Shown here: positions 27,307 through 62,688 of the stretch, piece after piece
How the letters are laid out: every line of letters begins with the position of its first letter
Numbering within the stretch: position 1 is the stretch's first letter
From: Macrostomum lignano
Taxonomy: Eukaryota
Assembly (NCBI GenBank): GCA_002269645.1
Contig: NIVC01003153.1
Location: forward strand, 52,346 to 116,345
Direction of reading: 5' to 3'
Length of the DNA stretch: 64,000 bases
Made by a program: the position numbers and the translations under genes
The notes under the pieces: generated by a model
What the model was told of the DNA's origin: nothing
The model's database searches: none
The model's input: only the letters and a program-made list of their open reading frames with translations

Positions 27307-28873
27307 TCTGCCTCTGTGCTGGGTGGGGGTGTGGGTGCGGTGTGTTGTGTGCGTGGTGTGGGGTGGTGGGGGTTGGGGTCGCGTTGGCCCTTTTATTCGC
27401 GTACTCTGTCCCTCAGCGTTGGCATGCTTATACTATAGTATAGACATAAAAAATATAGGGCCTAAGCCAAGCCAACCAGAGCCAGAGTTTAATACAATTA
27501 AACTAGACTGGAGTTACAGGATTTAAAGAATTTGTAAAATAATACAAACAAAATTGAATTCTATAAAATATAGCTTTGTATTTGTAAAGATAATGTAAAT
27601 AACTCGTTTCTACTTGGTTTGGACCCGTCACCAGACAGACAGACCTACAATCAAATAAAACACAATAAACTTCTTTATTTAGGCACATAGCAATATGCGT
27701 CATGATTGCGACTTCAGTCAATGATATTAAGACTTAAGAGCTACAAATAAAGTTTCAGAATAAACGAGTCGAATGAACTCAAGGGTCCATCCATCATTGT
27801 GTCCGAAATGTAACATTTGAGAATATTCATTTTTGTGGGTAAAAGAAGAACAACTGATGGCAGCAATGTTGAGCACACTGCCTTAAGTAAAAGTTAAAAA
27901 CATTTTGAAATCCTTGTAAAAGCATGATTAAAAGAGCCGTAAAACGAGTAAATTTGTTTTTTCTGATATATTCTTTGTTTTGACTTAACATAAACGTTAA
28001 ATCTGAGAGTTCTAATTCAATTTCTAAGTTTTTCTACGAAACACAAACATAACATGAAAATAATTGCTTTTTCATTCCATTCATTCCATTCCATTCCATT
28101 CAGTTCCATTTCATTCCATTCAGTGTGTGTGTGTATATGTTTCTTTTGAGCAAGAGTCAACTTAAAACAATTTTACGTTAAGTTACAAGCTACAAACCTT
28201 AATTGTACTTTTTTTTTCAATCTCGACAGCTTGTAGTGTCTTTGATCCTCAATTACAGATTAACACTTTAATTGTAGCTCGGTACCTACCATAAACGAAG
28301 CTTGATAGTTTTTAAACGTCTCTTGGCACAGAACATTTGTACTTATATTTTTTAAAATTTTATACGTCGCTCGTAGCTTAGCTTAGATTAATATGCAGTT
28401 CTCTCCAAATTATTTCTTACTCTATTTTAAAAAATCAGTTTTTTAATGAAAGAAAAACCTAACGATCCATTTGTAGCATTTTATTCGCCAGTAAAAAAAT
28501 CTAGTACGTATGAAAATTTTAATTTTTGAAAAGTAAGGTCTCAAAGCACCTAAAAAATTAACTGGTCACATAAGTAAGTCAAAATAGTTCTAATTTACTA
28601 TAGCTGACTTTTTAAGTTTCTAAAAGAGTTAAATTTTATTTTTTTTTAATGTTAGTGATTTTAACATAAGGTGCGTCCTTATATTTTTTTAAAAAAGATG
28701 CTTTAAAAATTTGTTTTATTTATTACTTTTATAACACAAATTACAAGAGGTTTTTGAGGCAAAAAATATAGGAATCATTACTTCACAAAGCTACATATTT
28801 CAATGTGTAAAAGTGTTCATAAGAACCGTAAATAAAAAATCAATCAAAGCCATTCCAGCAAACTGTGAACAAA

Positions 28874-29653
28874 ATGTCGTCAGAAGAAGCCAATGTCGGA
28901 GGCGCAGCCGAAAGCGCCGAAGCCGAACAGAGCGGCTACGAGTCGGTGCTCTGCGTGAAGCCCGATGTGAAAGTTTTCCGCCTACCGCCTCGCCAGTCGA
29001 ATCGGGCCGTACGCGCGGCCGACTGGCAGCTGGAGTCGCCCGATTGGTCCGGCCGGCTGCGCGTGGTGGCCAACGGCAGCCAGCTGTGGGTGCGGCTGGA
29101 GGACAAGACTAGCGGAGTCCTGTTCGCCCGCTGTCCGGTGGACGCGCATCCCGGCCTGGCCATCGAGCCCGTGGCCGACTCCAGTCGCTATTTCGTTCTG
29201 CGCATCCGCGATGACTCCGGCCGGAGCGCCTTCGTTGGCATCGGATTCGACGATCGGAGCGACGCCTTCGACTTCAACGTGGCCGTGCAGGATCACTTCA
29301 AGTGGCTGCGGCAGGAGGAGGAGGCGCGCCAGGCCGCCAAGGAGATGGAGGCCGGGCCGAAGCTGGACCTCGGCTTCAAGGAGGGCCAGACCATCAAGAT
29401 CAACATCAACACTCGCCGGACTGCCGACTCGTCGACGGCCAGCGGTGGCGCCAGTGAAGCTTTGACCAAGTCGCCGAGGCGGGAAAGACAGGTGGGGGTG
29501 GCTGGTGGGGCTGGCGGCCTCGGACTGCTGCCTCCGCCGCCCAGCAGCGGGCGGAACACCCATTCCAGGGGCGGAAGCGGGGGCGGAAGCGGGGGCGGAA
29601 GCGAAGGCGGCGCTGGGAGCAACCTGCCCGATTTGCTGGACAGCCTGGGCTGA
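28874..29653 (+). CDS. NECAP1: Adaptin ear-binding coat-associated protein (NECAP1/2-like), single exon
   Basis: PHear domain [60 protein letters not shown]; [16 protein letters not shown]; GLLPPPP. Confidence 0.92.
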
Positions 29654-38137: not shown

Positions 38138-38803
38138 AGAAAATCATGGGGGACCAATGGGGGAATGAAGGACCAATCCTGAGCATTTATATTTAGTCAA
38201 TACTCAGGGGAGAATATTCCCTTCACAGCTAGTAGGACTCAATGAGTCATTTTTAGGACCTCAGAGGCTGGGTAGGGGGTTGATGAAGCAGAAGTGATGG
38301 CAGGCTTGGGGGTGGGCAGAGCAGAGCTTGTTGCTCCCCAGGGACTCAAAATCTGGGTTGTCGATTTGGCGCCGCGGCTGTCCATCTTCTTTTACGAGCC
38401 CAGTAGCTGTCGGTGGTGCCTCAGTCAAGAGCTGCCATAGTTACTTGCAGTCTGAGAGCTCATTGGCTCAAAGGTTTAGGGGGGACCCTCTCTGAGTCAA
38501 CTCCCAGAGCTAACTAGGTAGAGCATTTCCTGACTAATCAGACATCTTATTGATTTTAGAAAACGAATTGTAGAAACATTACTGATAAAAAATCAAATCA
38601 TTTTTGTGTGCAGGACACTAGTTTTATTAATCAGACTGTCCGTCTAAGTTATCGATTTTACTGTGATATTTGATCAATGTTTTTCATAGGTTGAGTTGAT
38701 TGACCAAAAACAGTGCAAGTTTAATATGCTGAGTTTCTGGGGGGGAGGTTGCCTGAAGAAATAGACAAGTCTGATGATGCTGGGAAGCTGCGGCATACCA
38801 GGG

Positions 38804-38917: not shown

Positions 38918-39128
38918 ACGCCGGGTCGCCGGAGTTTAGGAGTTTAGGGGGGTTTGGGTCGTGGGGGATTGGAGGCGCCGGGGTTTGGGGCGCCGGAGAT
39001 TGGGGCGCTGGGGTTCTCAATGCCACAGAGTTAAAAAAAAGCACAAATTAAAATTTCACAAACAACCCCGCTAATCAGACAGATAAAATCCGTTAAAAAG
39101 GCATAACAAGTGACGCAGCCCCGTCATC

Positions 39129-40282
39129 TCAGATGATCTCCGTCTGCTCCCAGTCGTCGGGTACAATCGGTTGGAGCTGCTCTCGCTGTCTCCGCGCCGG
39201 CGCCTGTCGAAGAATCGACCGAGTCAGGAAGCGCCGGAATCCGGCGTCGGACAGGCAGAGGGCGCAGAAGTTGACGGTGGCGGCGCTGAGCGGCACCAGC
39301 GCGTACTCGGTGGCGTACTGAGCCACCGTGAGCCGGCCGATGCGGGCCCAGTGCGAGCGAAACGCCGGATCGGCTTCGTCGTACAGACCGTTGGCCAGGC
39401 GGACCTTCAGCCTGTCGGCGTGGGCGGTCATGAACAGGGTGTACACCACGGGAGCTGGCGCGGTCAGCACCAGGTAGGCGAAGGCGAGGCCCAACTGGCC
39501 GAAAGCCCGGCTCAGCTGACTGCCGGCCAATGACATCGAGTCGGTCGTGTCGGAATCGGCCTCCTGATGCTGCTGAGGATGGCGCAGCTGCTGCTGCTGG
39601 AGCTCCTCGGCCTGGCACTGGTGCAGGCTCTGGTAGGCGCCTTTCTTGAACAGCAGCCAGCAGGTGGCGAGGCTCAGCAGGCAGACCAGGCTGTAGGGCA
39701 GCAAACTTCTTACCAGGGCGTTGAGCAACGGCTTCACCTGAGTGACGTAGGCCAGGTTGGCAGCGAAGTTGTGCAGCCGTACGTAGTGCACGCACTGCCT
39801 GCCGACTGTTGACTTGGCGGGGGCCGCCGCCTCGTCACCGATGATGAGCATGCAGTTGAAGATGCAGGCAAAGCAGAACGCGCACAGGGCCATGATTGAC
39901 AGCTTGCGTCTGGGCAGCTCTTTGTGTGCCTGCTGCCCCTGCGCCTGCTGCTGTGGGTCCGGGTGTCGGCGGAACAACGAGTACACGGCCAGGAAGCGCT
40001 CGACGCTAAGGATCACTACGATGAAAGCTGACGACTCCACGGCTAGGTTGAGCAGGTAGGCTTGGAATTTGCACCACAGATCGGACCCGGGTCCCGGCTT
40101 CAAGTCCTGGTCGTGCTCCATGTAGCGATCGGTGAACAGCACCAGACAGGAGGTCGCCAGGATCAGACTGTCGAAGCACGCTAGCAGGCCGATGAGCAGG
40201 TTGCGGCCCACCTGGCGGGCCGGGCGGCTGCGTGCGAAATGAGCGATGATCAGGCCGTTGAGGGCCAGCCCAAGCACGACAA
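39129..40282 (-). CDS. GPCR 7TM exon
   Basis: Seven hydrophobic segments, ERF motif, extracellular Cys pair. Confidence 0.9.
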
Positions 40283-43200
40283 CTGCCGGCAGCGCGACCT
40301 TCGGGTTCGGGCAGGTGGGGATTGGCGACATGGTCTATCCGTCATTTCATGGTCTATCCGTCTCATCTCATGGTCTATCCGTCTCATCTCATGGTCTATC
40401 CGTCTCATCTCATGGTCTATCCGTCATCTCATGGTCCATCCGTCATCTCATGGTCTATCCGTCATCTCATGGTCTATCCGTCATCTCATGGTCTATCCGT
40501 CTCATCTCATGGTCTATCCGTCATCTCATGGTCTATCCGTCTCATCTCATGGTCTATCCGTCTCATCTCATGGTCTATCCGTCATCTCATGGTCCATCCG
40601 TCTCATCTCATGGTCTATCCGTCTCATCTCATGGTCTATCCGTCTCATCTCATGGTCTATCCGTCTCATCTCATGGTCTATCCGTCATCTCATGGTCCAT
40701 CCGTCTCATCTCATGGTCTATCCGTCTCATCTCATGGTCTATCCGTCTCATCTCATGGTCTATCCGTCTCATCTCATGGTCTATCCGTCTCATCTCATGG
40801 TCTATCCGTCATCTCATGGTCCATCCGTCATCTCATGGTCTATCCGTCATCTCATGGTCTATCCGTCATCTCATGGTCTATCCGTCTCATCTCATGGTCT
40901 ATCCGTCTCATCTCATGGTCTATCCGTCTCATCTCATGGTCTATCCGTCATCTCATGGTCTATCTCATGGTCCATCCGTCATATCATGGTCTATCCGTCT
41001 CATCTCATGGTCTATCCGTCATCTCATGGTCTATCCGTCATCTCATGGTCTATCCGTCTCATCTCATGGTCTATCCGTCTCATCTCATGGTCTATCCGTC
41101 ATCTCATGGTCTATCCGTCATCTCATTGTCTATCCGTCTCATCTCATGGTCTATCCGTCATCTCATGGTCTATCCGTCTCATCTCATGGTCTATCCGTCT
41201 CATCTCATGGTCTACCCGTCTCATCTCATGGTCTATCCGTCATCTCATGGTCTACCCGTCTCATCTCATGGTCTATCCGTCATCTCATGGTCTATCCGTC
41301 ATCTCATTGTCTATCCGTCTCATCTCATGGTCTATCCGTCATCTCATGGTCTATCCGTCTCATCTCATGGTCTATCCGTCTCATCTCATGGTCTACCCGT
41401 CTCATCTCATGGTCTATCCGTCATCTCATGGTCTACCCGTCTCATCTCATGGTCTATCCGTCATCTCATGGTCTATCAGCCGTCCTATAGTCAGGGCTAT
41501 AAATGAGCGCACCCACAGGAGATTGGCAAACCTTAGAAACGGCCTTGGCTCTCAGAATGGCAGGTACCCTATTCGAATACTGCTGAAACGCTGAGTACTC
41601 CCTCCAGATTTCCAGCCTCAAGCTGCGCCACAGAGTGTCGAGCTCCGAGAAGGCGGTGGCTCTCTTCGAGCGAACCGTTTTGCACGAGTCCAGCAGCTGC
41701 TGCAGCTCTGCCATCTCCCGTGGTTCAAGGTGCAACTCCACGCTCTTGTCGACATCCTCGCGAATCACTCGACAGTAGAAGTCGTTCAGTACGGCCGTCT
41801 GGAACTCCGTCAGGTGAGCAATTCTGGCTTTCGCCTGCTTTTGCAGACTGCGCAGGTACAGCAGCACGTGACCCAGCACCTGCCTACTGACCCAGGCCGC
41901 TGCTTCCGTCACGTTTGATTGGGAAAAATTCCCAACTGGAATTGGGGGGAGGCGAGGCTCTGGCGTGTCATTCAGAATGCATTCGGGTATTTCATTATCT
42001 AAAACTTTAAGCAAAGATCTATTTATACACCATTACAGATCTGTAGATACACCATTACGATCTATAGATACACCATTACAGATCTGTAGATACACCATTA
42101 CAGATCTGTAGATACACCATTACAGATCTGTAGATACACCATTGCAGATCTATAGATACACCATTACAGATCTATAGATACACCATTACAGATCTATAGA
42201 TACACCATTACAGATCTATAGATACACCATTACAGATCTATAGATACACCATTGCAGATCTATAGATACACCATTACAGATCTATAGATACACCATTACA
42301 GATCTATAGATATACCATTACAGATCTATAGATATGCCTATATAGATCCATATTGATGCCATTGCTGATCTATTGAGATTCTATTACAGATCTATATTGA
42401 TGCCATTGCTGATCTATTGAGATTCTATTACAGATCTATAGGCATGCCATTGCTGATCTATAGATATGCAATTACAGATTAGTTCACAAGCCATAAAAAA
42501 TCTACTGAAGTTCGACCGATGATCCACAGGCATTAAAAAACAGAACCTCTCAAACTCCAGCGCGCTCACCGGAAGTTCGGCATTCCAACGGCGTCCCAGT
42601 TCCGGTCTTGGCCGCCATTCTGGGCATCCGATCCCAAGCCAACTTAGAAAGTTCCGTATAGTTGGTTACTATGGCAACCAAACTGTCCGGATTTGGCCGG
42701 CTCGGCCAGGCGTGCAGAATGGCGTCAATTTGGCCCACGGTGGCCGCCACAATCCGTCTTGCGGAGTCCAGCAGCCTCCGAGCTGCATCGGCCAACTCGC
42801 GCCAAGTTCCGCTGCTGCACCCGGCGCCAGCCAATCCGGTTAGCAACCGGTATCTACCACCGGTAGTTGACAGGTAACCTGGATATCCGGTAGCCTGTTG
42901 GCCGGCAGAATCTCGCTTGGCCATGAATTCAAGAAACTCGTCCACCACCGGTTGAAGCTGAGAATGGCGGTGCAGCAGCTCGGCCCGGAGCCGCGGTCGG
43001 ACGGTCAGGTGTCGATAGACCCGGTGGTAGAGCTCCAGGTCCTCCAGGTAGGCCACCAGGTTGTCCAGGGCCTCCTCCCAGTTCCAGCGGCTGTAGTAGG
43101 ACGAACCGTCGTACTGGAAGGTGCCACCGAACCTGGCCACGAGGCGCCAGTTGTTGGCGAAGAACTGCAGAAATCCGCTGTACTTCACCGAGGCGAAGGC

Positions 43201-43368
43201 CCACTCGTGGCGTCGGTATTGAAAATTCAGCGCGACAACTTGGTAGGCTTCTAGGAGAATGCTCTGGTTGCTGCTTGGCGTTGCTGACGGCGGGGCAGCA
43301 GTGCCGTTGCCCGGCTGACACAGAGCTCCCGGCAGCATCAGCAGGGCTAATAACAGCGGTCCAGGCAT
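39129..43368 (-). CDS. Class A (rhodopsin-like, peptide/FMRFamide-receptor-like) GPCR with signal peptide and long N-terminal ectodomain, 3 exons (43368-42570, 41998-41513, 40282-39129), ~812 aa
   Basis: Both introns phase 1 (GTGAGC..TTTTAG; GTGCGC..GGCAG). Splicing builds TM1 SPVVVVLGLALNGLII; TM2 LLACFDSL; LWCKFQAYL; TM3 SVERFLAV; TM7 VNFCALCLSDAGFR. Confidence 0.75.
40328..41477. repeat. 19/21-bp minisatellite ((CT)CATCTCATGGTCTATCCGT), GPCR intron 2
   Basis: Direct; two interleaved length variants. Confidence 0.95.
41513..41998 (-). CDS. GPCR ectodomain exon 2 (predicted)
   Basis: Open 161-codon frame between repeat-filled introns, phase-compatible splice sites. Confidence 0.7.
42030..42480. 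repeat. 22-bp minisatellite (TACAGATCTATAGATACACCAT), degenerating rightwards, GPCR intron 1
   Basis: Direct. Confidence 0.9.
42570..43368 (-). CDS. GPCR exon 1 with signal peptide (predicted)
   Basis: MPGPLLLALLMLPGALC signal peptide; N-glycosylation sequons; donor GTGAGC 42569-64. Confidence 0.72.
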
Positions 43369-44215
43369 GCTGAGCAGTCAGCTGTCAAAGTCCGCTAAGT
43401 AAGATGGCGGAGGCTGAGCCCAGCACTCAGCTCCGTTTGCTTTTATCTTGTCCTCTTTTCTGAGGAGGGCCAACTCACCTCCCAGCCGCTCAGCGAATCC
43501 TCACAATCCCCATCCCATCCTGCATGGCAGTTCGTCCCTCAGCCGCCATGGATTACTAACCCCAGGTGTCCGGTGAGGAAGTTTCCTCATTTTGCTAGAA
43601 GCGAAATAAATAATTCAGAAAGTTGAAAGTCAATAAACTGAGCACCCGAGAGTCCAGATATTTCACCTTTCCTGTTGAACTAAGTCGCCAATAGTCTGCC
43701 CGATGCACCTTCAAAACTATTGCGGAGTGTTCACTATTTTTAGATCCGTTTTCAACCTCTCCAGACTCTCCAGCACTCCATGGCTCGCGAGTCGCTTCCT
43801 CATCTTCCCCCAATCGTCCCCTCTCAGATGGCCCCCTAATGTGAGCAGTTCCTCCGACCGTCTCCGCAGCTTCTTTTCAGGCTGCTGCTTTTGCTTTTGC
43901 TCTTCCCTTCAGTTTCTTTTTCTGTTTGCAGCCAGCAGCCGCCCAGCCAGCCCAGGAGGCGCCGCCCTCCAGCCTCTGAGACTGCATCACAAGAGGAGAA
44001 GCCAAATTCAGGGCTGGGTGTGGAATCTTCAGCTTGGTTGCCTGATGATGGCCCGGATGAGGGAGCGGGGGATGCTGGGGCGTCTTTTAATTGCCGTTCT
44101 TATTTATTTGCCTGTCCGCTTTCTTCAGACCGGCTTTCTGGCCGGATTTGGGCGTTGTTTGGAAATTTCTGACTGCTGAATACTGGAGTAAGGCTGGCTG
44201 GGACAGAAATAAATT

Positions 44216-44950
44216 AAGACAGACACTAAGACAGGCACTAGGACAGACACTAGGACAGGCACTAGGACAGACACTAGGACAGATACTAAGACAGGCACTA
44301 GGACAGGCACTAGGACAGGCACTAGGACAGGCACTAGGACAGGCACGAAGACAGGCACTAGGACAGACACTAGAACAGGCACTAAGACAGACACTAGGAC
44401 AGGCACGAAGACAGGCACTAGGACAGACACTAGAACAGGCACCAAGACAGACACTAGGACAGGCACCAAGACAGACACTAAGACAGGCACCAAGACAGGC
44501 ACTAGGACAGACACTAGAACAGGCACCAAGACAGACACTAGGACAGGCACCAAGACAGACACTAAGACAGGCACGAAGACAGACACTAGGACAGACACTA
44601 AGACAGGCACGAAGACAGGCACTAGGACAGACACTAGAACAGGCACCAAGACAGACACTAGGACAGACACTAGGACAGGCACCAAGACAGACACTAAGAC
44701 AGACACTAAGACAGACACTAAGACAGACACTAAGACAGACACTAAGACAGACACTAAGACAGACACTAAGACAGACACTAAGACAGACACTAAGACAGAC
44801 ACTAAGACAGACACTAAGACAGACACTAAGACAGACAGACACTAAGACAGGCACTAGGACAGACACTAGAACAGGCACCAAGACAGACACTAGGACAGGC
44901 ACTAGGACAGACACTAAGACAGACACTAAGACAGACACTAAGACAGACAC
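44216..44950. repeat. 12-bp minisatellite (ACAGACACTAAG/ACAGGCACTAGG)
   Basis: Direct. Confidence 0.92.
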
Positions 44951-45656
44951 ATTGGAGACAACTGGAATGCAATAAAGATCATACCAAGTGCTTGATTCAG
45001 CCATTCAGTCATTAATTCAAGAAGATGTACTTTTCAGAAATCACAAGTCGCACTGCGCCGCCATCAGGAATGCCAGGCTCAGCGGGAGTGCAAGCCTCGC
45101 CCTCAGCCAAGTCGCCAAGCTGATTTATCCAATGTCCGATTACAAAAAAGGCGGATCAGAACGTAGGAGGGCATTGGGGAATCGGGGAGGGGAGAATTAT
45201 CCCCATTCGCACAAGGGCCACGCCCTGAGCGCGGATTTGCTTTGCTCTGCCCCCGCTCATCCTGCATCCGGAGATGCGAACGGTTCTTGTCCAGTTGACA
45301 GCCTGTGCTGCAGTGCTTCCCCGCTAGTGCGGCGGGATCTGCCCCAGGATTCCTTTCTCTGCCGTTTCTTGTCTACTAGTGGAAGCCAGTAAAATAATCT
45401 GACCCAGTTTCCAGTGCCAGTTACCAGTAAAGACAGCCAAGATTGAAATTCTCCCAGCCATGAATTCGCCGCGTGAAAAATGCAATCCTTCACTGTGGGG
45501 TGCAATTAATCCTTTGCGATCATTCGCCTTCGAACACCTGCCTTCCAGCCGCTGTGCCTCTGCGCTCCGTGCCGCTCTGCCTTTTTGCATCCATACTTGC
45601 CATCTGCAGCCGCTTCTGCTTCATCCAATTACTAATTCTTTAATTAACTTCCCGTT

Positions 45657-46024: not shown

Positions 46025-46475
46025 CAAATATCTATACTGCCTACTTTTGTACAACTTTTACAACTTTTGAAGTTGTTTGAGAGCGGCAGCACAAGCCATC
46101 AGTCAGGACTGCGGTACCACGCAATCTTTTAAGCCCTTTAAAAGCAATTATACAGACAGACGGCAACACAACAGCTTCCATCCGCGTCAGTCTTTTAGAA
46201 ACTCTTGAGTTAAATTCCTCCCCAACTCCGCTTCATTGATTATTTAACAATGAGTTTTTTTACCGTAGCCTCAAGCTCACTGCCTTCACACCTCAGCGGA
46301 CCAATAAACAAATGAGGTGCAGTTGCTGTTGGCTGGCTGTCAGCTGAGTTCTGAGACTGTCGCTGACTCAGTTCTAACTTTTGGGGGGACAAAGAGAAAG
46401 GGGAGATGCAATGAGGCGACTCCAGCGACCCTTCGAGTGACCTTTCCAGCTCAGAAAACTTAGAGCAATTTAGAT

Positions 46476-47581
46476 TGTCAGGTGTGCCATTTGTCAGTGT
46501 CAGGTGTGCCCTTTGTCAGTGTCAGGTGTGTCATTTGTCAGTGTCAGGTGTGCCAGTTGTCAGTGTCAGGTGTGCCCTTTGTCAATGTCAGGTGTGCCAT
46601 TTGTCAGTGTCAGGTGTGCCATTTGTCAGTGTCATGTGTGCCAGTTGTCAGTGTCAGGTGTGCCATTTGTCAGTGTCAGGTGTGCCAGTTGTCAGTGTCA
46701 GGTGTGCCATTTGTCAGTGTCAGGTGTGCCATTTGTCAGTGTCAGGTGTGCCATTTGTCAGTGTCAGGTGTGCCCTTTGTCAGTGTCAGGTGTGCCATTT
46801 GTCAGTGTCAGGTGTGCCCTTTGTCAGTGTCAGGTGTGCCATTTGTCAGTGTCAGGTGTGCCCTTTGTCAGTGTCAGGTGTGCCATTTGTCAGTGTCAGG
46901 TGTGCCCTTTGTCAGTGTCAGGTGTGCCATTTGTCAGTGTCAGGTGTGCCATTTGTCAGTGTCAGGTGTGCCCTTTGTCAGTGTCAGGTGTGCCATTTGT
47001 CAGTGTCAGGTGTGCCCTTTGTCAGTGTCAGGTGTGCCATTTGTCAGTGTCAGGTGTGCCATTTGTCAGTGTCAGGTGTGCCAGTTGTCAGTGTCAGGTG
47101 TGCCATTTGTCAGTGTCAGGTGTGCCATTTGTCAGTGTCAGGTGTGCCAGTTGTCAGTGTCAGGTGTGCCAGTTGTCAGTGTCAGGTGTGCCATTTGTCA
47201 GTGTCAGGTGTGCCATTTGTCAGTGTCAGGTGTGCCCTTTGTCAGTGTCAGGTGTGCCATTTGTCAGTGTCAGGTGTGCCCTTTGTCAGTGTCAGGTGTG
47301 CCATTTGTCAGTGTCAGGTGTGCCAGTTGTCAGTGTCAGGTGTGCCCTTTGTCAGTGTCAGGTGTGCCATTTGTCAGTGTCAGGTGTGCCAGTTGTCAGT
47401 GTCAGGTGTGCCATTTGTCAGTGTCAGGTGTGCCAGTTGTCAGTGTCAGGTGTGCCAGTTGTCAGTGTCAGGTGTGCCATTTGTCAGTGTCAGGTGTGCC
47501 ATTTGTCAGTGTCAGGTGTGCCAGTTGTCAGTGTCAGGTGTGCCAGTTGTCAGTGTCAGGTGTGCCCTTTGTCAGTGTCAG
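46476..47581. repeat. 22-bp minisatellite (TGTCAGTGTCAGGTGTGCCATT), ~50 copies
   Basis: Direct. Confidence 0.95.
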
Positions 47582-48099
47582 ATGGCGCTTCTGAAACATT
47601 TTTGGAGTGTCAGGAATGCCACTGCGAGTTGTCAGGTTTGCCCCCTCCCAATTAAAAAGCCAGAGCTGAGTTGTGCTCAAGCCTGAGTGCTCAGAATTAA
47701 CCAGCCGGGGAGCTCAGCTGCAACTTGATACCCTCTGAGTTGCAATTCAGCACAGAAGAGGTGTTGGATTTTCTGTTGCTTGCAACCTCAAAGCTTCAGA
47801 CAGCACAAAGGAACTGACACTGCCTACAAAAGGGGATTGGCGTCCCAATTTTCCTTGTTTGCTTGATGGGGTCACAGTTGGGTGCCAAGCATTGATGCAG
47901 TGAGTCAGTCCGGCTCTCGGCTGGATCACACCTGCACCTCATCCCGTGTCCCAATTGTTAACAGCTGGGAGATCGTTTTCCTGGGATGAATTTTTAGGGG
48001 ATGCAATTTGTGTCAGAAATGTCTACCTTTCAGTGTCTCAGGGCTCTAGGAAAATTATTTCTGATTTCCGATTCAAAGCAGCTATACTCTTAGAATGTT

Positions 48100-50110: not shown

Positions 50111-50589
50111 TTCTGTAGTCTAGCTGTATAAGTTTCGATCTCCATGACTCCAACAGGCCGATCCCATTTCCCTGCAGCTGGGCTAACAGATTGCAAGAAT
50201 TTCTTCCCCTCGAATTACGTAACGCGCCTCAGAAATCAACGAAGTGGAAATTTTTTTCGTCGCCCGAAGTCTGTCGGTAAACTCGGCGGGGGGTCTGTGC
50301 GAAAAAAGAAATTGTTCTTGCTTCGAGTTAATTCAAAACTGGACTAGGAGCGCCGGGCGACAGCAAGTGAGTGAGTGACATTTCGTGTATTCACTGAGCA
50401 GCTGCCCCGGAATCATGAAGCGCTGCGGTTTTATCGCTGGCTGAGTGAGAAATGCATCATTTCTCAGCCTGCTTTGTTTCTCTTGAGCTCATTCTGCGTC
50501 ACTGAGGCTCTCCATCCTGTCTGCCTCTCTCTTTATCTCCTCATTTGCCAACTCCCTCAACTGCCTGCCCACTGACTCTGAGCTCTGCT

Positions 50590-51572
50590 CGTCTCTTGCG
50601 ATTCTCGTCCTCCCTCCCTCTCATGCTCATCTCCTCTCTCTTCTCGCTCTACTCTTTCCTCTCTTCCTCTCTCTCCCTCTCTTCCTCTCTCCCTCTCTCC
50701 CTCTCTCTCCCTCTCTCCTCTCTCCCTCTCTCCCTCTCTCCCTCTCTTCCTCTCTCCCTCTCTCTCCCTCTCTCTCTCTCCCTCTCCCTCTCCCCCTCCC
50801 CCTCCCCCTCTCCCCCTCTCCCCCTCTCCCCCTCTCTCCCTCTCTCTCTCCCCTCTCTCCCTCTCTCCCTCTCTCTCTCTCCCTCTCTCCCTCTCTCCTC
50901 TCTTCCTCTCCCCCTCTCCCCCTCTCCCCCTCTCCCCCTCTCCCCCTCTCTCCCTCTCTCTCTCTCTCCCTCTCTCCCTCTCTCCCTCTCTCTCTCTCTC
51001 CCTCTCTCCCTCTCTCCCTCTCTTCCTCTCTCCCTCCCTCTCCCTCTCTCTCCTCTCTCTCCCTCTCTCCCTCACTCCCTCTCCCCCTCTCCCCCTCTCC
51101 CCCTCTCTCCCTCTCTCTCTCTCCCTCTCTCCCTCTCTCCCTCTCTCCCTCTCTTCCTCTCTCCCTCCCTCTCCCTCCCTCTCCCTCTCTCTCCCTCTCT
51201 CCCTCACTCCCTCTCCCCCTCTCCCCTCTCTCCCCCTCTCTCCCTCTCTCTCTCTCTCCCTCTCTCCCTCTCTCCCTCTCTCCCTCTCTCCCTCCCTCTC
51301 CTTCCCTCTCCCTCTCTCTCCCTCTCTCTCTCCCTCTCTCTCCCTCTCTCTCTCTCCCTCTCCCCCTCTCTCCCTCTCTCTCTCTCCCTCTCTCCCTCTC
51401 TCCCTCTCTCCCTCTCTTCCTCTCTCCCTCCCTCTCCCTCCCTCTCCCTCTCTCTCCCTCTCTCCCCCTCTCCCTCTCTCTCCCTCTCTTCCTCTCTCTC
51501 GCTCTCTCCCTCTTTCCCTCCCCCTCTCTCCCTCTTCCCCTCTCTCCCTCTCTCCCTCTCTCCCTTCCTCAA
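50590..51572. repeat. CT-rich low-complexity (polypyrimidine) tract
   Basis: Direct. Confidence 0.92.
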
Positions 51573-53367
51573 TCTCACCGTTCTCTTTTCCCTCTTAGCT
51601 TCACCAGGTTCCTTGGAACACCTCGAAGGAAAAAGTGCCTACCAAAACTGAACGCACAGCGAATATTTCTTAATCCTGAGTTCAGCCAACTCCTCAAAGC
51701 TTCAGACGATTCAGCCTCTCCTTAGCAAAGTACATTCCGTCATTTCAAATATTCTTACTTTTTTCTCAATCTATTCTGCGATACGCCTCAATTGTCCGGC
51801 CCACAACTGTCAGTCTGTCTGTCTGTCCAGCACATTCTAAATTCAGTCTTCCAAGAACTGCCCCACGGCTACAAACTGCTTGTCAGAAACTCTTCAGTTC
51901 CGCCTTATCTCAGTTTGAAATCCTGGCCCATGAGCTGGCAACACCCATGGTTGGCCCACTGTGATTGATCTCGCTGTGACTTGGCGTGACCAAGGATGCC
52001 TCTAGTTTGAAATCTGGACTGGCAGCGGAACCTTTCTCGGACTTGGTTTTCAGGGACTACTAAAACTTTTTGGAATGGAAGCTGAGCCTTTGATTGTTCA
52101 GGGACGCCTAAAACCACTCTGGATTGGAAGCTGAGCTACTATTTAATAAGGACTCCCAAAACTTCTCTGGACTGTAAATGAGAATAGAAAATTAGTTTAC
52201 TTAGAAAAATGCAGAAATCAAGTTTGAGTCTGCATCTGCAGTCTATATTGGATCATACCGGTATTTTAATTAAAATTCCAAAAAGTTCTAGAAAGATAGC
52301 TTTATTGGCTCCAGTCCAGACATTCTAATCAAGTCGTCCATGACGCGGAAAATAATGGGTGGGGATTTTTCACACAGTTCCCCGGCATTTGTCCATCAGC
52401 TCGTGAAGGGGGCGGCGCGGGGCGCGGCAAGCAATCGGAATTGATGGATTGCATTGTGGAGTGCCTCGACCGCTTATATTATTAAGCACTCCCTGAACTC
52501 TGCCTCTGCAGCTCCCGTACCCACCAGAGGTGACCCCCAGATCCCACATTCCCCAGCCAAGTTTCAATAATATGGGCCAATGGCATTTTTATTCATAGGC
52601 AACCCCATTGAGAGCAATGACTGGCGGATATTGGCATCACCAGATAGTTATTGACTTTCGCTAAAGTTGCTGGGGTACTTCTCAGTCACTCTTCATCTGG
52701 GAGCTGAGTCTGAATAATGCTCTGATCACTTTTTTATGTCAGCTCAGCTTTCAGTATCTATTGATTATCGGTCATTTCAGGGTGCAGTTCAGGGTTCAGT
52801 TCAGGGTGAGTAGTATACGTTTTTTTGACACAAAGCCGATTTCCTTATGGCGAAATACATAGTAAGTACAGGCCCAAAAAAATGGCAGAGTCCGAAATTT
52901 CATGTGCACGCAGTCTGAAATTCCATGTGCACGCAGTCTGAAATTCCAAGTGCACGCTAAATATCTTTTACGCAACGTGATTATTCAGACGAATTGCATA
53001 TCCACCTGTCCAAAATACAAGTAACCGATTCTAGCAATGGTGACACAAACACACTTCAAAGGATTCCATTCAAGACAAATTTACTCCAAAGCTATTCACA
53101 CATTTCAAGTGTTTTTGAAATATTGAAAACTTGTGAATATTATCACCCTTTTGAAGAAAGATAGTAAATGATCTATTCTTGAGTGCCTATAGAATTTTTG
53201 CACCAACTTGAGCAGATGGTTTACAGATACTATGTCAACAACTGCGTCAACATGCTTCTTCTTTATACTATATATATATACGAACACACTGACACAGAAA
53301 ATATTAAATAACTTAAACCAAGTTTACATTATACTACTTGTTCAACTATACTTACATCTTAAGTGAA

Positions 53368-55878: not shown

Positions 55879-57077
55879 ATGGCAGCTTGCATCAAGACGG
55901 AGTCAATTGTACGCTCCGACTCGAGTCCGATTTTTTACGTTGGAGAGCAGTCTACAACCACGACTGGTTCGTCCTGCCAGTTTCGATCTATTGCGTGGAA
56001 ACCATCAATCGAGTGTACAAAATGGTACCCAATTATATTGCAAACCAAGGCTCCAATGGAGCTTTTTCGTGGAATCGCAGAAAGGCCAGAGCTCGATCAT
56101 CCGTCTTGCAGACACGACTCTCGCGACGCAGTAAGTGTCCAATTTCATCCAGACAGCTGCGATAAGGAACTCTTCCACTCTCTCCGGTGAGCACCATATT
56201 AAATTTATACAATTAATTTTAGGAAACTATATTCATAATTTATATAATGTTTTGCAGTCAAGTCGAAAAAGGTCTATCGGTCAAGTTGAACGAGATTCAA
56301 GATGCTCGACCCTTGGCACGACTAACAAAACCAGCTCATCAGCATGCTAACGACGTCCTCGAGTTTGTGCCTCAACAATGGCTGGCTATAAAGCCTGCTT
56401 ACCCTTGTGCCACAATCAGGATCAGCAACGATCATCCACACGGGAAGGAGGTGTCCATTTCCGATTTCAAAGGTGTCAGCGGTACCTACCAAATGACAGT
56501 GCAAGCAACGAGCTTGTATTGTCCAAAAGGCTGCCTCGTCTGGCGCATTACATTCGCTGTGCGCTCTCTGACACTCATAGAATCTTCCGACAACATGTTG
56601 CAGCGCCTCGACATGTTCAAGGGAGTGCTTGCACACCTACCCGCGACCAAGTCAGCAATTAGAAGCAGGAGTCCGTCCCCAACATCTACCTGTGAGCAAG
56701 AAGAAGCAAATGAACAAAGCCTGCAGAATTCAAGCCAGGTGACACCTGCCAAGTCACCTGCAAAGCGTCGGTCTACCACCACCGTATCGAAGAAGTCGAC
56801 TACATCGAATGCAGCGCCAGCCTCTATTGAACCGCCGCCTAAAAAGCAAGTTCGAAAACGCAGCGGTGCAAAACAGCAAAACAATTCTGCCGAAGCTGGT
56901 GCAGATGGCACAGACTGGGTGGAGGCTCCACCAGCAAAGATCTTGGTGAGTACACCTGCCTCTGGAACCAGGGTAGCGTCCAAGGAGACAGCATTTTTAA
57001 AGCGTGCTGCTGCGGACGCTACTACAGCTAGCGTGTCTTCATCGGACGACTCGTACAGCAGCTCTGATGATGAGTAA
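55879..57077 (+). CDS. Maverick uncharacterized protein, possibly OB-fold ssDNA-binding; 2 exons (55879-56186, 56258-57077)
   Basis: 71-bp phase-2 intron GTGAGC..TTTTGCAG joins ORFs 55879 and 56247; K/S/T-rich linker and acidic tail SSSDDSYSSSDDE. Confidence 0.6.
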
Positions 57078-57287
57078 CAAAATTTTTGACTAATTTTATC
57101 CAAGTTTTAACTAACTTATTCCACTATATTTATCAAATTTTTGGCTAGGGAAATATTATTTTTTAGGGAAAAGCTCAAAACATTTTTTGCTACTCCTTGT
57201 ACGCTAACCAGGTTTTGTAATTTAATATTAGAATTTACGATAGTATAGTCATGTTTAACTTTTCTTATTATTTATTTTCCGTTTTAG

Positions 57288-57845
57288 CGACTTGTCCTAT
57301 TAATAGTTACTGCGAGTCTGAAGCTGCACCCGTTTGAAAAATTTGATTTAAAGCAGACCAAACAGAAGCTACAGACCAGAAACCGGTTTTGCAAACTATT
57401 CCTAAGCCGACCAACAATGCTAAAGACAATTTATTCAAATGCTAAAATCCAACTTTATCCAGCAGGAAAACTAACTATATATGGCTGTAAATCAAATTCT
57501 CAGATAGTCTCAGTTTTACGATTTATCAACGACACTATTAATTGTGTAGATTTTGATTCAGTAAAAATTCAGAGCAGTACCTATGTCGGCTTTATTGGTC
57601 ATCTTTGGCCAAAATTCGGTTTCTCTAGTCTAAAAAGATATGCAGGCTACTATTCGAATTATCTGGTTGGATACGATGCAGAAAATTTCCCACAAGCAGT
57701 TTCTGTTAGATCAGCATCAAAACCAAGGCTTTTTTGTAACATATTTTTTTCGAAAAAGTTTGTTATTATGGGCGTTCAAAACACTCATGAATTGAATAAT
57801 ATTCTTAACCATGTCAAGGATTTTTTAATCTCTGTTAATAACTAA
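57288..57845 (+). CDS. TATA-box-binding-protein (TBP)-like protein, divergent; frame opens right after an AG acceptor, first ATG at 57417
   Basis: RLVLLIVTASL..KFDLKQ (cf. QNIVSTVNL..LDLKT); KIQLYPAGKLTIYGCKS (cf. ALIFSSGKMVCTGAKS); VKIQSSTYVG (cf. FKIQNMVGS); YDAENFPQ..KPRLFCNIFFSKKFVIMGV (cf. YEPELFPG..KPRIVLLIFVSGKVVLTGA). Confidence 0.8.
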   Translation, partial: RLVLLIVTASLKLHPFEKFDLKQTKQKLQTRNRFCKLFLSRPTMLKTIYSNAKIQLYPAGKLTIYGCKSNSQIVSVLRFINDTINCVDFDSVKIQSSTYVGFIGHLWPKFGFSSLKRYAGYYSNYLVGYDAENFPQAVSVRSASKPRLFCNIFFSKKFVIMGVQNTHELNNILNHVKDFLISVNN

Positions 57846-58068
57846 ACTTAACAAGTAAACAATTGCTGTCAAATCGCAGTTGCGATGCATTCTTTTACAA
57901 ACATTTTGTCTTTTTTTATTTATTTACCAATTGTTTTCTCTAATAGTAAACGTGTCAGCTATACCTATAACTAACCAAATCATCATTTTTCTTACAGCCG
58001 CAAATGACAAACCGGATCATCTATTAATATTATGCTCGATACGCTCGTTGTCGAGCTAGGTGCACACA

Positions 58069-58782
58069 ATGCCGCGTGCACAATGCCAAATCTGCAGAAA
58101 AAAGTTCAGTAATCAAGCCGAGCTGCATGCTCACTCGCATGGTGCTTGTTTTTCACCGCAACGATTACTGACCGGATCGCTGCAAAACCTGATCGAAAAC
58201 CCACCAGATGGGTGGTCCATCGCTTTGCGCGAGTCAGCTCATCGTGGTCGGGTAAATTTTGTCGAATTTACTCCCACTCTTGAACAACAAGGCAACAGCT
58301 CTGGCGAGTTACTTCCTGGCGAGTTGATTGCGTCTTTAAGAGAACCAATATTTAAAATATTGGAAAAAATTGGCTCACCCAGTTTATTAATAAGAGTCTG
58401 CTTTCACTTGAAAGTGACACTATTTCGACCGAAAACAGCAGCAGACGACAACGATGGCTCGAGCAGCGAAGAGATCATTTCGGTCTATTTTAATACCAAC
58501 ATTGCGACAATATCATTTGATGAGACGATTACAAACAGTGACATGCTGTTATCTCCCGAGGCCTACAATGACTGGTTCGCACGCGTTATTAATCAGTTGT
58601 TAATAAAAATTGACAATTTTCAATCTCGAGGTAGTAATTGGCAATATAGAGCAATCGAGCAGCTAGACTTGATGCTCTGCGTTTATCGCAAAAGCCATGC
58701 AAGCACACTGTCAACAAATACGTCCCACGGTGGTGTGGGGGCGGGCGGCGGCAGTGGTGGTGGTGGCGGCGGTGGTGGTGGT

Positions 58783-58814
<32 letters not shown>

Positions 58815-58950
58815 GCGCGGGGAGTCCGGTCCAGTCCGGTCCGGTCCAGTCCGGTCCGGTCTGGTTAAGCAGCAATCGTTTAAAGTTCCAGTCTCAATCG
58901 GTCGCAAAGCTGGAGCAGTACTGCTTCTAAAGCCGCACAGAGCAGTTTAA
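58069..58950 (+). CDS. C2H2 zinc finger + N-terminal region of Maverick protein-primed PolB (catalytic core absent)
   Basis: CQICRKKFSNQAELHAH; KIDNFQSRGSNWQYRAIEQLDLMLCVYR (cf. EFxERGSGWxLxxIxxLxxNINKY preceding pPolB); in-frame poly-Gly; stops ~490 bp before dUTPase. Confidence 0.65.
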
Positions 58951-59437
58951 AGCATCAAGACTATTTAAGAGTCTTACACAAGCGACAACTTGTGTTTTCG
59001 CGCATACAGTCCATTCGTTCTCGAAAACAGAAAGTTTTTTTTGATGCAACAAAGAAAACTTGCACTAAGCTTCTTCGATACGAAGCGATCCTGGACAAGT
59101 TCAATTAATTCGCTACCCTTTGGACACTGGCACTTGGCTAATTAATTAACAATATGCTCTGATCTCTTTTGTTGTACAAAGTAATAGCATGCTATAGAAG
59201 ACTGTAACCCATCATTAATTTTTTCATTGATCATTATTTACAATAAATAAATGATACCGGCATTCGTTTAAATTATAATTTTAGCACTTTTTTGTGTTTA
59301 ATTATTTGAAAAAGTATATTTTTTATAGTTAGATTCTCAAGACTAAGCTTGTGTTTGTAGTAGACGTAAATGTAGTGCTATCGTTCATGTTTCAAGAAAA
59401 AAAACTTTTTTTTAAACTTTCAGCTACAAGAATCGAC

Positions 59438-59920
59438 ATGAATCCCGAGCAGCAGCAGCAACAACAACTAACTGATCGTAAGCTTTTAGTTGAACGTCTA
59501 TACGATTCGGCAACGATTCCGACCCGAAAAACTGTCGGGTCGATCGGGTATGATCTTTGCGCTGGCGTCGATGGTACCATTCCGGCCTACGAGTCCCGGA
59601 GTGTGCGAACCGGACTCAAAATTCGCTTACCGCCTGGTACCTATGGCAGGATAGCGGGACGTTCCAGCATGGCTCTGCACAGCTTATTTGTTGGCGGTGG
59701 CGTAATCGACCCCGACTATACTGGTGAAATCTGTATAGTCTTGTTTAATTACAGTCCGGAAGACTTTGAGTACTATGCCGGGCTCAGTATTGCACAACTG
59801 GTTCTGGAGCAGGCCGTGCTTGCTTCAGTCTATGTGACTGAAGCAGACAATTCGATTCGGATGATTGAGCCGCCGACCAAGCGGCGCGGCTTTGGCGGCT
59901 TTGGCAGCACTGGCCAATAA
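59438..59920 (+). CDS. dut: Trimeric dUTPase
   Basis: All five motifs: GYDL, GRSS, GGVIDPDYTGEI, IAQLV, RGFGGFGSTG. Confidence 0.95.
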   Translation: MNPEQQQQQQLTDRKLLVERLYDSATIPTRKTVGSIGYDLCAGVDGTIPAYESRSVRTGLKIRLPPGTYGRIAGRSSMALHSLFVGGGVIDPDYTGEICIVLFNYSPEDFEYYAGLSIAQLVLEQAVLASVYVTEADNSIRMIEPPTKRRGFGGFGSTGQ

Positions 59921-60011
59921 GTATAATAATAATAATAAACTGATTTTTTTCTTTGGTGATTGGTGCACTATGCGAGAGCTTTGTAAATACTATAAGCAAT
60001 TTTAAAAATTT

Positions 60012-60455: not shown

Positions 60456-60457
60456 AA

Positions 60458-61147: not shown

Positions 61148-61204
61148 TATTATTATAAGCAAATTATAAACTGTTGTCAATATTAGTTTGTGTTTTATTT
61201 CAAA

Positions 61205-62194: not shown

Positions 62195-62250
62195 TTTATA
62201 AGCAAAGATTAATTGTGTAATAGAAAATTTTGTGAATTTGTTTTGTAAGA

Positions 62251-62655: not shown

Positions 62656-62688
62656 TACGATCAATTCAACGAAAGTAGTAGGAATATA

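What the first reader, a model, noticed from the sequence alone, without database searches (positions are those of the whole stretch)
39129..43368. Peptide-type class A GPCR with a ~430-aa unrecognised ectodomain
Seen: three ORFs that look unrelated in the ORF track join through two phase-1 introns (each filled by a minisatellite) into one 812-aa frame, and the second junction builds a normal TM1. The ectodomain has a signal peptide and predicted helical, Cys-poor sequence with no LRR, LDLa, GAIN or Venus-flytrap motifs that I can recognise. Known: long ectodomains in class A are mostly LRR/LDLa types. Inference: a novel receptor architecture, perhaps capturing a large ligand.
Basis: partly seen in the sequence, partly recalled or inferred. 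Interest (0 to 1): 0.7.

Follow-up and report, generated by a model that had tools for sequence, protein, structure and literature searches.

The report
Flatworm orphan receptor, possible ectodomain fusion
In what is almost certainly Macrostomum lignano DNA, a flatworm-specific (PROF1-like) orphan G-protein-coupled receptor ORF lies just downstream of two exons for an unknown secreted helical protein; they can be spliced into one 812-aa receptor on paper, but nothing available here shows that they are, and several features suggest the receptor block has a separate history.

Summary
The sequence facts hold. Three minus-strand ORFs (43368-42570, 41998-41513, 40282-39129) are separated only by two minisatellites and can be joined GT-AG into 812 aa, with a signal-peptide-like start, six N-glycosylation sequons and seven hydrophobic segments. 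The join itself is not special: nine in-frame donor/acceptor pairs exist for intron 2, and none has the species' GT[G/A]AG donor.

The organism is Macrostomum lignano or a close relative. The only database relative of the ectodomain is a chimeric M. lignano model covering residues 1-163.

The 7TM passes Pfam 7tm_1 (36 bits). It scores higher against a profile of flatworm PROF1 group II receptors (42.8 bits; amine receptors score 16-29) and carries PROF1 motifs in TM6 and TM7. PROF1 genes are reported intronless with short N-termini.

The 7TM ORF has its own ATG. Its GC3 is 0.85, against 0.66-0.74 upstream. It is bracketed on both sides by minisatellite-unit sequence.

The ectodomain has no Pfam, PDB or other homologue, and AlphaFold2 gave unusable confidence.

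My estimates: two separate products 0.45, fused receptor 0.35, inserted or non-functional copy 0.20. Transcript data would settle it.

The parts
43370..43478 (-). Candidate 5'UTR intron: donor GAG|GTGAGT at 43479|43478, acceptor ctgctcag|C one base before the ATG
   Evidence: GT[AG]AG scan and sequence. The junction in the chimeric M. lignano model P0001 falls exactly at this acceptor. Inference only.
42570..43368 (-). Exon 1: ATG, signal-peptide-like MPGPLLLALLMLPGALC, then the N-terminal helical part of the secreted/ecto sequence (residues 1-266). Residues 164-266 are doubtful as coding; an alternative donor CAG|GTTACC sits at 42879|42878.
   Evidence: Coding LLR is 0.32 for residues 1-163 but -0.01 for 164-266. 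Residues 1-163 are 98-99% identical to UniRef100_A0A1I8FML4 of M. lignano.
41999..42569 (-). Intron 1 (phase 1), GTGAGC...TTTTAG, holding a 22-bp x 21 minisatellite (42015-42479)
   Evidence: The donor matches the M. lignano consensus GT[G/A]AG.
41513..41998 (-). Exon 2: residues 267-428, two long predicted helices. The ORF runs on to a stop at 41466 inside the first repeat unit.
   Evidence: Coding LLR is 0.25 in frame only. Predicted helices 293-352 and 359-408 have pLDDT 58-78.
40329..41477 (-). Minisatellite (unit GACGGATAGACCATGAGAT(GA), about 56 copies) filling the whole space between exon 2 and ORF 3. It is either intron 2 or an intercistronic spacer.
   Evidence: Each unit carries ATG, TGA and TAG. 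No AATAAA or ATTAAA occurs in it.
39129..40331 (-). ORF 3: uninterrupted 400-codon 7TM reading frame (PROF1-like rhodopsin-family receptor). The ATG at 40331 has A at -3.
   Evidence: Pfam 7tm_1, 36 bits. PROF1 group II HMM, 42.8 bits over TM1-TM6, with controls. Motifs LACFD, ERF, YLVLTAP and NFCAL..FR. GC3 is 0.85.
39121..39131 (-). TGAGATGACGG: an 11-mer of the minisatellite unit lying on the stop codon of ORF 3. It is the only copy outside the array.
   Evidence: expected 0.06 per window. (no other unit-like sequence in the window).
38623..38725 (-). First canonical poly(A) signals downstream of ORF 3 (ATTAAA ending at 38725, AATAAA at 38628)
   Evidence: The minus strand has no AATAAA/ATTAAA between 44091 and 38725.

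Best explanation
The locus holds two coding units with separate histories, lying in one block that has no poly(A) signal.

Unit A (exons 1-2, possibly with exon 1 ending already at 42879) encodes a signal-peptide-led, N-glycosylated, all-helical protein. It has no detectable relatives outside Macrostomum.

Unit B is an intronless 400-codon ORF for a divergent rhodopsin-family receptor. Its closest detected relatives are the flatworm-specific PROF1 (group II) orphan receptors. Like them, it is most likely translated from its own ATG (40331), with a very short extracellular N-terminus.

Inferred, not shown: because the spacer is nothing but a minisatellite, the two are probably co-transcribed. 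They would then be separated by spliced-leader trans-splicing, as in M. lignano operons.

The receptor would work as an ordinary class A type 7TM. It has N1.50, D2.50, the Cys3.25-ECL2 pair, ERF, P5.50 and P6.50. The toggle Trp and NPxxY are replaced in the PROF1 manner. Its ligand is unknown.
For: - Organism: the only hit of the ectodomain is an M. lignano protein.
- Family similarity: the HMM of 14 PROF1 group II sequences gives 42.8 bits across TM1-TM6. Flatworm amine receptors score 16-29 and 500 block-shuffles score at most 7.8.
- Motifs: TM6 Y...T.P and TM7 NF..L, with FR at +11/+12, match PROF1 Table 3.
- Family architecture: PROF1 genes are reported as exclusively intronless. Their group II N-termini have 15-39 aa before the conserved Pro; ORF 3 has 14.
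- ATG 40331 has A at -3.
- GC3 is 0.85 in ORF 3 against 0.66-0.74 in exons 1-2.
- No intron 2 donor matches GT[G/A]AG.
- The start and stop contexts of ORF 3 both lie in minisatellite-unit sequence, marking it as a discrete block.
- In M. lignano, 30% of genes are trans-spliced and 15% are in operons. Repeats inflate intercistronic distances, whose repeat-adjusted mode is about 100 bp.
Against: - No unique intergenic sequence exists. The stop of unit A and the ATG of unit B both lie in the same array.
- No AATAAA or ATTAAA occurs between 44091 and 38725, so unit A has no visible 3' end of its own. The argument is weak, because the NECAP gene's first AATAAA is also about 1.5 kb past its stop.
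- About 56 upstream ATG-TGA mini-ORFs and 56 identical TAG|ACC acceptor-like sites precede ATG 40331.
- None of the candidate acceptors fits the trans-splice motif YTNCAG.
- The standalone N-terminus lacks the family's [FY]R[AG][YF]xxP motif and scores worst of all variants against it.
- A signal-peptide-bearing, anchorless protein directly upstream, on the same strand and joinable in frame, is what a fusion predicts.
- Similarity to PROF1 groups I and III is nil (7-12 bits).
Confidence: 0.45

Rival explanations
1. One gene. Exons 1, 2 and 3 are cis-spliced into a receptor of about 710-830 aa in which a cleavable signal peptide exports an orphan all-helical ectodomain fused to a PROF1-like 7TM. 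The exact junction is open. The ectodomain, ending in a long helical hairpin just before TM1, would capture a ligand or act as a tethered modulator. Given the composition break, this would probably be a young chimera, made when the 7TM block landed downstream of exon 2.
For: - The three ORFs are on the same strand, consecutive, and have nothing but minisatellites between them.
- Minisatellite-filled introns are the rule in this window, as shown by the UBR2-like gene, which is colinear with human UBR2.
- Intron 1 is textbook (GTGAG).
- The topology is coherent: signal peptide, all six sequons and no membrane anchor upstream, then seven TM segments.
- There is no poly(A) signal between the parts.
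- The stop of ORF 2 and the ATG of ORF 3 are both supplied by repeat units, as expected for ORFs that merely run on into an intron.
- Exon 2 ends with AILRAKA, reminiscent of the PROF1 pre-TM1 motif IFRAY, though with the wrong spacing.
Against: - PROF1 genes are reported intronless with short N-termini.
- All intron 2 donors are non-consensus.
- Sequence upstream of the acceptor has exon-like composition.
- GC3 jumps from 0.66 to 0.85 at the junction.
- No protein containing exon 2 sequence exists among 1.84 billion representatives. The only annotated model touching the locus joins exon 1 to a different gene.
- Residues 164-266 may not be coding.
- AlphaFold2 gave no confident model or domain contact (pLDDT 40-42).
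Confidence: 0.35
2. ORF 3 is a recently inserted, promoterless copy or fragment of a PROF1-like gene whose parent lies elsewhere in the highly duplicated M. lignano genome. It landed inside a pre-existing minisatellite downstream of exon 2. It is intact only because it is young, and it is not a functional part of either reading (dead on arrival, or expressed only incidentally). Alternatively, exons 1-2 are themselves a decaying duplicate.
For: - ORF 3 is bracketed by array sequence...GATAGACCATG|ORF|TGAGATGACGG. The 11-mer occurs nowhere else outside the array.
- Both its ATG and its TGA are supplied by unit-like sequence.
- The family pre-TM1 motif is missing.
- Its composition differs from its neighbours.
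- A 98-99% identical copy of exon 1 exists in a different genomic context: fused to ATG27 exons that are absent from this window.
- Part of exon 1 lacks a coding signal.
Against: - ORF 3 is 400 codons without a stop and has the strongest coding periodicity in the locus (LLR 0.38-0.41).
- All key class A positions are intact.
- There is no poly(A) tail, terminal inverted repeat or other insertion hallmark.
- The proposed parent copy could not be looked for.
Confidence: 0.2

Closest known systems
[quoted passage not shown] S. mansoni SMP041880 and S. mediterranea SMDC907.1A (Zamanian et al. 2011, PMC3261222)
   Same: - The 7TM lies in one uninterrupted ORF.
- LA..D in TM2.
- W6.48 is replaced (Y...T.P).
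- NP..Y is replaced by NF..L, with FR 11-12 residues later.
- A Pro lies 10 residues before N1.50.
- The profile score of 42.8 bits is above that of generic class A controls.
   Different: - The relationship is very distant. Scores against group I and III profiles are at background (7-12 bits).
- ERF replaces DR[L/V].
- The group II hallmarks DDFLGRGL (ECL1) and [FY]R[AG][YF]xxP (pre-TM1) are absent.
- Q-rich inserts sit in ICL2 and ICL3.
- The composition is GC-rich.
- No PROF1 member is known with a long ectodomain.
Class A receptors with large ectodomains: LGR/glycoprotein-hormone and relaxin-family (RXFP1/2) receptors
   Same: If the fusion is real: a signal peptide, then an ectodomain of several hundred residues, then a rhodopsin-type 7TM.
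   Different: - No LRR or LDLa domains (Pfam).
- The ectodomain is predicted all-helical with 6 Cys.
- The 7TM belongs to a different, flatworm-specific branch.
M. lignano spliced-leader operons (Ustyantsev & Berezikov 2021, PMC8629364)
   Same: - Same-strand neighbours whose spacer is essentially all repeat.
- The repeat-adjusted distance is within the operon mode.
- An AG lies directly before ACCATG of the downstream ORF.
   Different: - None of the candidate acceptors fits YTNCAG.
- No poly(A) signal is visible for the upstream unit.
- No spliced-leader or T-fill read data were available to me.
Adhesion GPCRs / Methuselah-type receptors
   Same: A long N-terminal extracellular region before a 7TM (only if the fusion is real).
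   Different: - The 7TM matches 7tm_1, not class B.
- No GAIN/GPS or other adhesion domains.

Membership tests
Rhodopsin-family (class A) GPCR, Pfam PF00001 7tm_1 | Profile match above the curated gathering score | tested here: met
   36 bits against a cutoff of 30.5, E 7e-09. The match covers only TM1-TM5.
Rhodopsin-family (class A) GPCR, Pfam PF00001 7tm_1 | Seven hydrophobic helices with N1.50, D2.50, Cys3.25 plus an ECL2 Cys, and E/DRY | tested here: met
   Seven segments at residues 427-773 of the 812-aa model. LALNG, LACFD, WCKF with GRQC, and ERF (Y replaced by F) read from the sequence.
Rhodopsin-family (class A) GPCR, Pfam PF00001 7tm_1 | W4.50, CWxP (TM6) and NPxxY (TM7) | tested here: not met
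   There is no Trp in TM4. TM6 reads LTAP and TM7 reads NFCAL. These are the same departures that PROF1 shows.
Peptide-receptor branch of class A | Significant similarity to deorphanised peptide receptors | tested here: inconclusive
   The best PDB matches are the apelin, NPY1, BB3 and galanin receptors, but at E 1e-3 to 0.3 and over TM1-TM3 only. Zamanian's SVM called all PROF1 members peptide-responsive, but that is a prediction.
PROF1 (Zamanian 2011) | Family motifs in TM2, TM3/IL2, TM6 and TM7 (Table 3) | tested here: met
   TM2 LA..D, TM6 Y...T.P and TM7 NF..L all fall within the PROF1 patterns. TM3 is ERF where PROF1 has D[R/K/S]x, so that motif is only partly matched.
PROF1 (Zamanian 2011) | Profile similarity to family members above that of other rhodopsins | tested here: inconclusive
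   Group II HMM: 42.8 bits, against 16-29 for amine receptors, 35-87 for PROF1-I and 49-62 for PROF1-III. Group I and III HMMs give only 7-12 bits. Shuffle control: maximum 7.8 bits. No phylogeny was made.
PROF1 (Zamanian 2011) | Intronless gene with a short extracellular N-terminus | tested here: inconclusive
   The 7TM is one ORF, and from ATG 40331 the N-terminus has 14 aa before the conserved Pro, against 15-39 in the family. Whether upstream exons are spliced on is the open question.
LGR / relaxin-receptor type class A | LRR and/or LDLa domains in the ectodomain | tested here: not met
   No Pfam family at E<=1 in residues 1-428.
Adhesion GPCR | GAIN/GPS domain and a class B 7TM | tested here: not met
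   No such Pfam hits; the 7TM hits 7tm_1.
M. lignano spliced-leader operon | Downstream gene trans-spliced to the leader; upstream gene polyadenylated within about 1 kb (repeat-adjusted) | not testable with these tools
   This needs spliced-leader and T-fill read tracks. Only the geometry (a repeat-only spacer) could be checked. No leader-like sequence is in the window.

The most novel reading that the evidence does not exclude
A flatworm-specific PROF1-type orphan receptor has acquired, by exon capture, a roughly 325-430-aa orphan all-helical glycosylated ectodomain. That would be a class A architecture with no LRR/LDLa precedent and would be caught at a young stage. The non-fused version is nearly as interesting: a secreted orphan protein and an orphan GPCR co-transcribed as an operon, which would nominate the first candidate ligand or co-receptor for any PROF1 receptor.
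Probability: 0.35. Interest if true: 0.55.

Novelty: new member of a known kind. Interest (0 to 1): 0.33.

Why it matters
PROF1 receptors are among the largest flatworm-specific GPCR groups. They are discussed as anthelmintic targets and are all orphans. A Macrostomum relative physically or transcriptionally coupled to a secreted protein would give a testable ligand or partner hypothesis in the one flatworm with stable transgenesis.

The locus also shows how minisatellite-rich introns, operons and a spliced leader ending in ATG make gene models in this genome ambiguous. The gene appears to be missing or mis-merged in public protein sets.

If the two units are simply neighbours, the finding is an ordinary unannotated lineage-specific GPCR.

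Tried and rejected
- **Word-indexed homology searches.** Three searches (the full 812 aa, the 400-aa ORF, and a trimmed 7TM at E<=10) returned nothing. They did not even return the 98-99% identical fragment P0001, so their silence is uninformative.
- **Exhaustive representative search.** The 7TM therefore never had an exhaustive search.
- **Exact-product look-ups.** ORF 3, ORF 1 and the neighbouring NECAP ORF are not on record. No transcripts or second genomic copies could be fetched.
- **AlphaFold2 without an alignment.** The full length gave pLDDT 40.5 and the ectodomain alone gave 42.1. This is too poor for Foldseek, so no fold search was run.
- **Paralogues and internal repeats.** No paralogue was found in the window, and there is no internal repeat between the exon 1 and exon 2 domains.
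- **Exact look-up of the nine junction variants.** This was considered and dropped. Any protein containing exon 2 would already have been found.
- **Retrocopy of a trans-spliced mRNA.** There is no spliced-leader remnant and no poly(A) tail, so this is rejected as the simple explanation.
- **Bacterial promoter/terminator scan.** It is irrelevant for a eukaryote and was at background.
- **LGR, adhesion or Venus-flytrap type ectodomains.** Rejected on Pfam.
Full report
**What is in the sequence.** On the minus strand, three ORFs follow each other: 43368-42550, 42014-41466 and 40331-39129.

Intron 1 starts GTGAGC and ends TTTTAG. It holds a 22-bp x 21 minisatellite (42015-42479). The space between exon 2 and ORF 3 is almost entirely a 21/40-bp minisatellite of about 56 units (40329-41477).

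The product starts with a signal-peptide-like MPGPLLLALLMLPGALC. All six NxS/T sequons lie in the first 295 residues, and there are seven hydrophobic segments at 427-773. A crude codon-usage log-likelihood, trained on conserved genes of the same window, is positive only in the proposed frame for all three exons. The description is therefore accurate.

**How much of that exceeds chance.** The ORFs and their coding signal are real. The in-frame join is not distinctive.
- For intron 2 there are nine in-frame GT..AG combinations, giving 799-828 aa.
- None of the donors (GTGCGC, GTTTGC, GTACCT, GTGGGT, GTTTCT) fits the GT[G/A]AG motif that the M. lignano splicing paper found as the top cis-donor motif, in 122,399 of 187,627 splice-site regions.
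That resembles ORF 3 itself. It does not resemble the AT/T-rich unique parts of intron 1.
- Within exon 1, residues 164-266 (42879-42571) show no codon periodicity (LLR -0.01; GC1-3 of 0.54/0.61/0.62). A stop-free stretch of that length has p of about 0.02 by shuffling.
- A CAG|GTTACC site at 42879|42878 is phase-compatible with exon 2.

The ectodomain may therefore be about 325 aa rather than 428.

Minisatellite-filled introns are not special here. A UBR2-like gene on the same strand (about 1-24 kb) is colinear with human UBR2 (PDB 9wbv, E 1.7e-35). Its introns hold several minisatellites plus a LINE and a Ty3/gypsy element.

**Organism and existing annotation.** An exhaustive HMMER search of residues 1-428 against 1.84 billion representative proteins found one real hit. 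P0001 (E 1e-101) is UniRef100_A0A1I8FML4, 'Autophagy-related protein 27', from Macrostomum lignano.

Its last 163 residues are 98-99% identical to exon 1 residues 1-163. Its first 182 residues (an ATG27/M6PR-like part) are not encoded anywhere in the window. That model is therefore a merged or chimeric prediction from another copy of the locus.

Its junction falls on the AG one base before our ATG. In the window that AG pairs with a perfect GAG|GTGAGT donor at 43479|43478, which suggests a 109-nt 5'UTR intron. No protein anywhere in that library contains exon 2 sequence. The other hit (P0002, E 3.7e-05, nine matched stretches) is a 2046-aa, highly repetitive sequence that I judge to be a repeat artefact, not a relative.

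**The 7TM part.** Pfam 7tm_1 is passed (36 bits against 30.5), but only over TM1-TM5. The best PDB matches are peptide receptors (apelin, NPY1, BB3), at E of 1e-3 or worse and over TM1-TM3 only. 'Peptide-type' is therefore not established.

The sequence keeps N1.50, D2.50, Cys3.25 plus an ECL2 Cys, ERF, P5.50 and P6.50. It lacks W4.50, has T in place of W6.48 (YLVLTAP), and has NFCAL in place of NPxxY. These departures are the ones tabulated for the flatworm-specific PROF1 family: TM6 [F/Y/V]...[S/A/T].P and TM7 N[F/I]..[M/L] (Zamanian et al. 2011).

I took the published PROF1 sequences and a control set of S. mansoni amine receptors, and built profiles locally.
- The group II profile (14 sequences) scores ORF 3 at 42.8 bits from TM1 through TM6.
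- On the same profile, amine receptors score 16-29, PROF1 group I 35-87 and group III 49-62.
- The reversed sequence scores -1.1. Five hundred block-shuffles score -4.3 +/- 6.9, with a maximum of 7.8.
- Group I, group III and amine profiles give ORF 3 only 7-15 bits.

I conclude that ORF 3 is a distant, Macrostomum-lineage relative of PROF1 group II. It is not a clean member. The group's DDFLGRGL and [FY]R[AG][YF]xxP signatures are missing.

[quoted passage not shown] In full-length group II members, only 15-39 residues precede the conserved Pro that lies ten residues before N1.50. Read from ATG 40331 (A at -3), ORF 3 has 14 such residues. A standalone receptor is therefore the family-typical architecture.

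Further points for a separate unit:
- GC3 is 0.83-0.86 in ORF 3 against 0.62-0.74 in exons 1-2.
- The donor problem and the exon-like composition upstream of the acceptor, described above.
- ORF 3 is bracketed by array sequence...GACGGATAGACC ATG [ORF] TGAGATGACGG GGCTG.... The 11-mer TGAGATGACGG occurs 23 times in the array and once more in the 64 kb, exactly on the stop codon (expected 0.06 per window). The unit occurs nowhere else with up to three mismatches.

Either the 7TM block was inserted into a pre-existing array, or the unit is a collapsed head-to-tail junction of once-repeated ORF 3 copies. Both readings make ORF 3 a discrete block.

M. lignano biology also offers a ready way to express it separately. 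Thirty percent of genes are trans-spliced to a leader that ends in ATG, and 15% sit in operons. Repeats inflate intercistronic spacers, whose repeat-adjusted mode is about 100 bp.

**What speaks for the fusion.**
- There is no unique intergenic sequence at all. The stop of ORF 2 and the ATG of ORF 3 are both supplied by repeat units. That is what happens when exons simply run on into an intron.
- There is no AATAAA or ATTAAA on this strand between 44091 and 38725, so unit A has no visible 3' end before ORF 3. The control is weak, because NECAP's first AATAAA is also about 1.5 kb past its stop.
- Fifty-six ATG-TGA mini-ORFs and identical TAG|ACC sites precede ATG 40331.
- No candidate acceptor fits the trans-splice motif YTNCAG.
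- The topology is coherent: a signal peptide and a glycosylated, anchorless domain, followed by a 7TM that needs its N-terminus outside.
The best score is matched by 21% of random 9-mers.
- Exon 2 ends in AILRAKA, reminiscent of IFRAY but at the wrong spacing.

**The ectodomain.** It has no Pfam family (E<=1), no PDB relative and no internal repeat. AlphaFold2 without an alignment gave pLDDT 40.5 (full length) and 42.1 (ectodomain alone). It predicts an all-helical chain with two very long helices (about 293-352 and 359-408), the only stretch with pLDDT of 58-78. Cys342 and Cys372 would face each other in such a hairpin, but that is inference. The models are too poor for a fold search, so none was run.

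**Weighing.** A secreted-protein gene ending about 1.1 kb upstream on the same strand and joinable in frame is rare by coincidence. I estimate well under 1% of GPCR genes. However, this genome has hundreds of class A genes (259-704 in free-living flatworms), and the locus was selected for looking like this, so the coincidence is not excluded.

The family architecture, the in-frame ATG, the non-consensus donor, the composition break and the bracketing by array sequence then pull the other way. My estimates are:
- two separate products (probably co-transcribed): 0.45;
- fused receptor: 0.35;
- recently inserted or non-functional copy, or another arrangement: 0.20.

The step 'ORF 3 is a PROF1-like class A 7TM' is shown. 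The step 'exons 1-2 encode an exported orphan helical protein' is well supported for residues 1-163 and 267-428. How the two are expressed is inferred.

**Novelty.** As it stands, this is an unannotated, lineage-specific member of a known kind of receptor next to an orphan gene. If the fusion, or an operon pairing a secreted protein with its receptor, is confirmed, it would be a new variant and a useful handle on an entirely orphan receptor family. Short- or long-read transcript data for M. lignano exist publicly and would decide this. I could not reach them with the tools here.

Noticed in passing
window 39121-39131 (-) and 40329-41477: The 11-mer TGAGATGACGG of the intron 2 minisatellite unit recurs once outside the array, exactly on the stop codon of the 7TM ORF. 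The ORF is therefore flanked on both sides by unit sequence. The last 26 nt up to and including that 11-mer match 1.3 units at 19/26. This suggests either insertion of the 7TM block into an array or an array derived from head-to-tail ORF junctions.
   Followed up: partly
window 42571-42879 (-): The second part of 'exon 1' (residues 164-266) is stop-free but shows no codon periodicity. The M. lignano database fragment P0001 ends exactly at residue 163, where CAG|GTTACC could splice in frame to exon 2.
   Followed up: partly
window 43370-43479 (-): A perfect GAG|GTGAGT donor lies 109 nt upstream of an AG that sits one base before the ATG, suggesting a 5'UTR intron. In UniRef100_A0A1I8FML4 the same acceptor is joined to ATG27-like exons that are absent from this window, so a second copy of exon 1 exists in another genomic context, or that model is chimeric.
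   Followed up: partly
window about 1000-23900 (-): A UBR1/UBR2-like E3 ligase gene. Its exons are colinear with human UBR2 (PDB 9wbv, E 1.7e-35). Its introns carry several long minisatellites (for example 3855-4925, 17415-18858 and 21427-22925) and about 10 kb of retroelements.
   Followed up: partly
window 7035-16174 (+): Two retroelements lie inside the UBR2-like intron, antisense to it. One is a LINE with an APE endonuclease and RT (8567-10828). The other is a Ty3/gypsy-type pol with protease, RT, RNase H and integrase (12408-16174).
   Followed up: partly
window 28865-29653 (+): A single-exon NECAP-like ORF (Pfam DUF1681, E 1e-58), followed by a CT-rich minisatellite. Its first AATAAA lies about 1.5 kb downstream.
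   Followed up: partly
window 56247-63378 (+): A run of same-strand, apparently intronless ORFs in lower-GC DNA (0.38-0.45). It includes a dUTPase (59351-59920, E 2e-29), a Walker-A-containing ORF (60452-61147) and three ORFs with no family. This could be an integrated virus-like or Maverick-like element. It was searched gene by gene only, not assembled or characterised.
   Followed up: partly
window-wide, e.g. 40239-41594 (+), 44087-45004 (-), 46475-47686 (+), 50545-51651 (+): Dozens of minisatellites generate long spurious ORFs in several frames on both strands. ORF lists in this genome are dominated by such artefacts.
   Followed up: no
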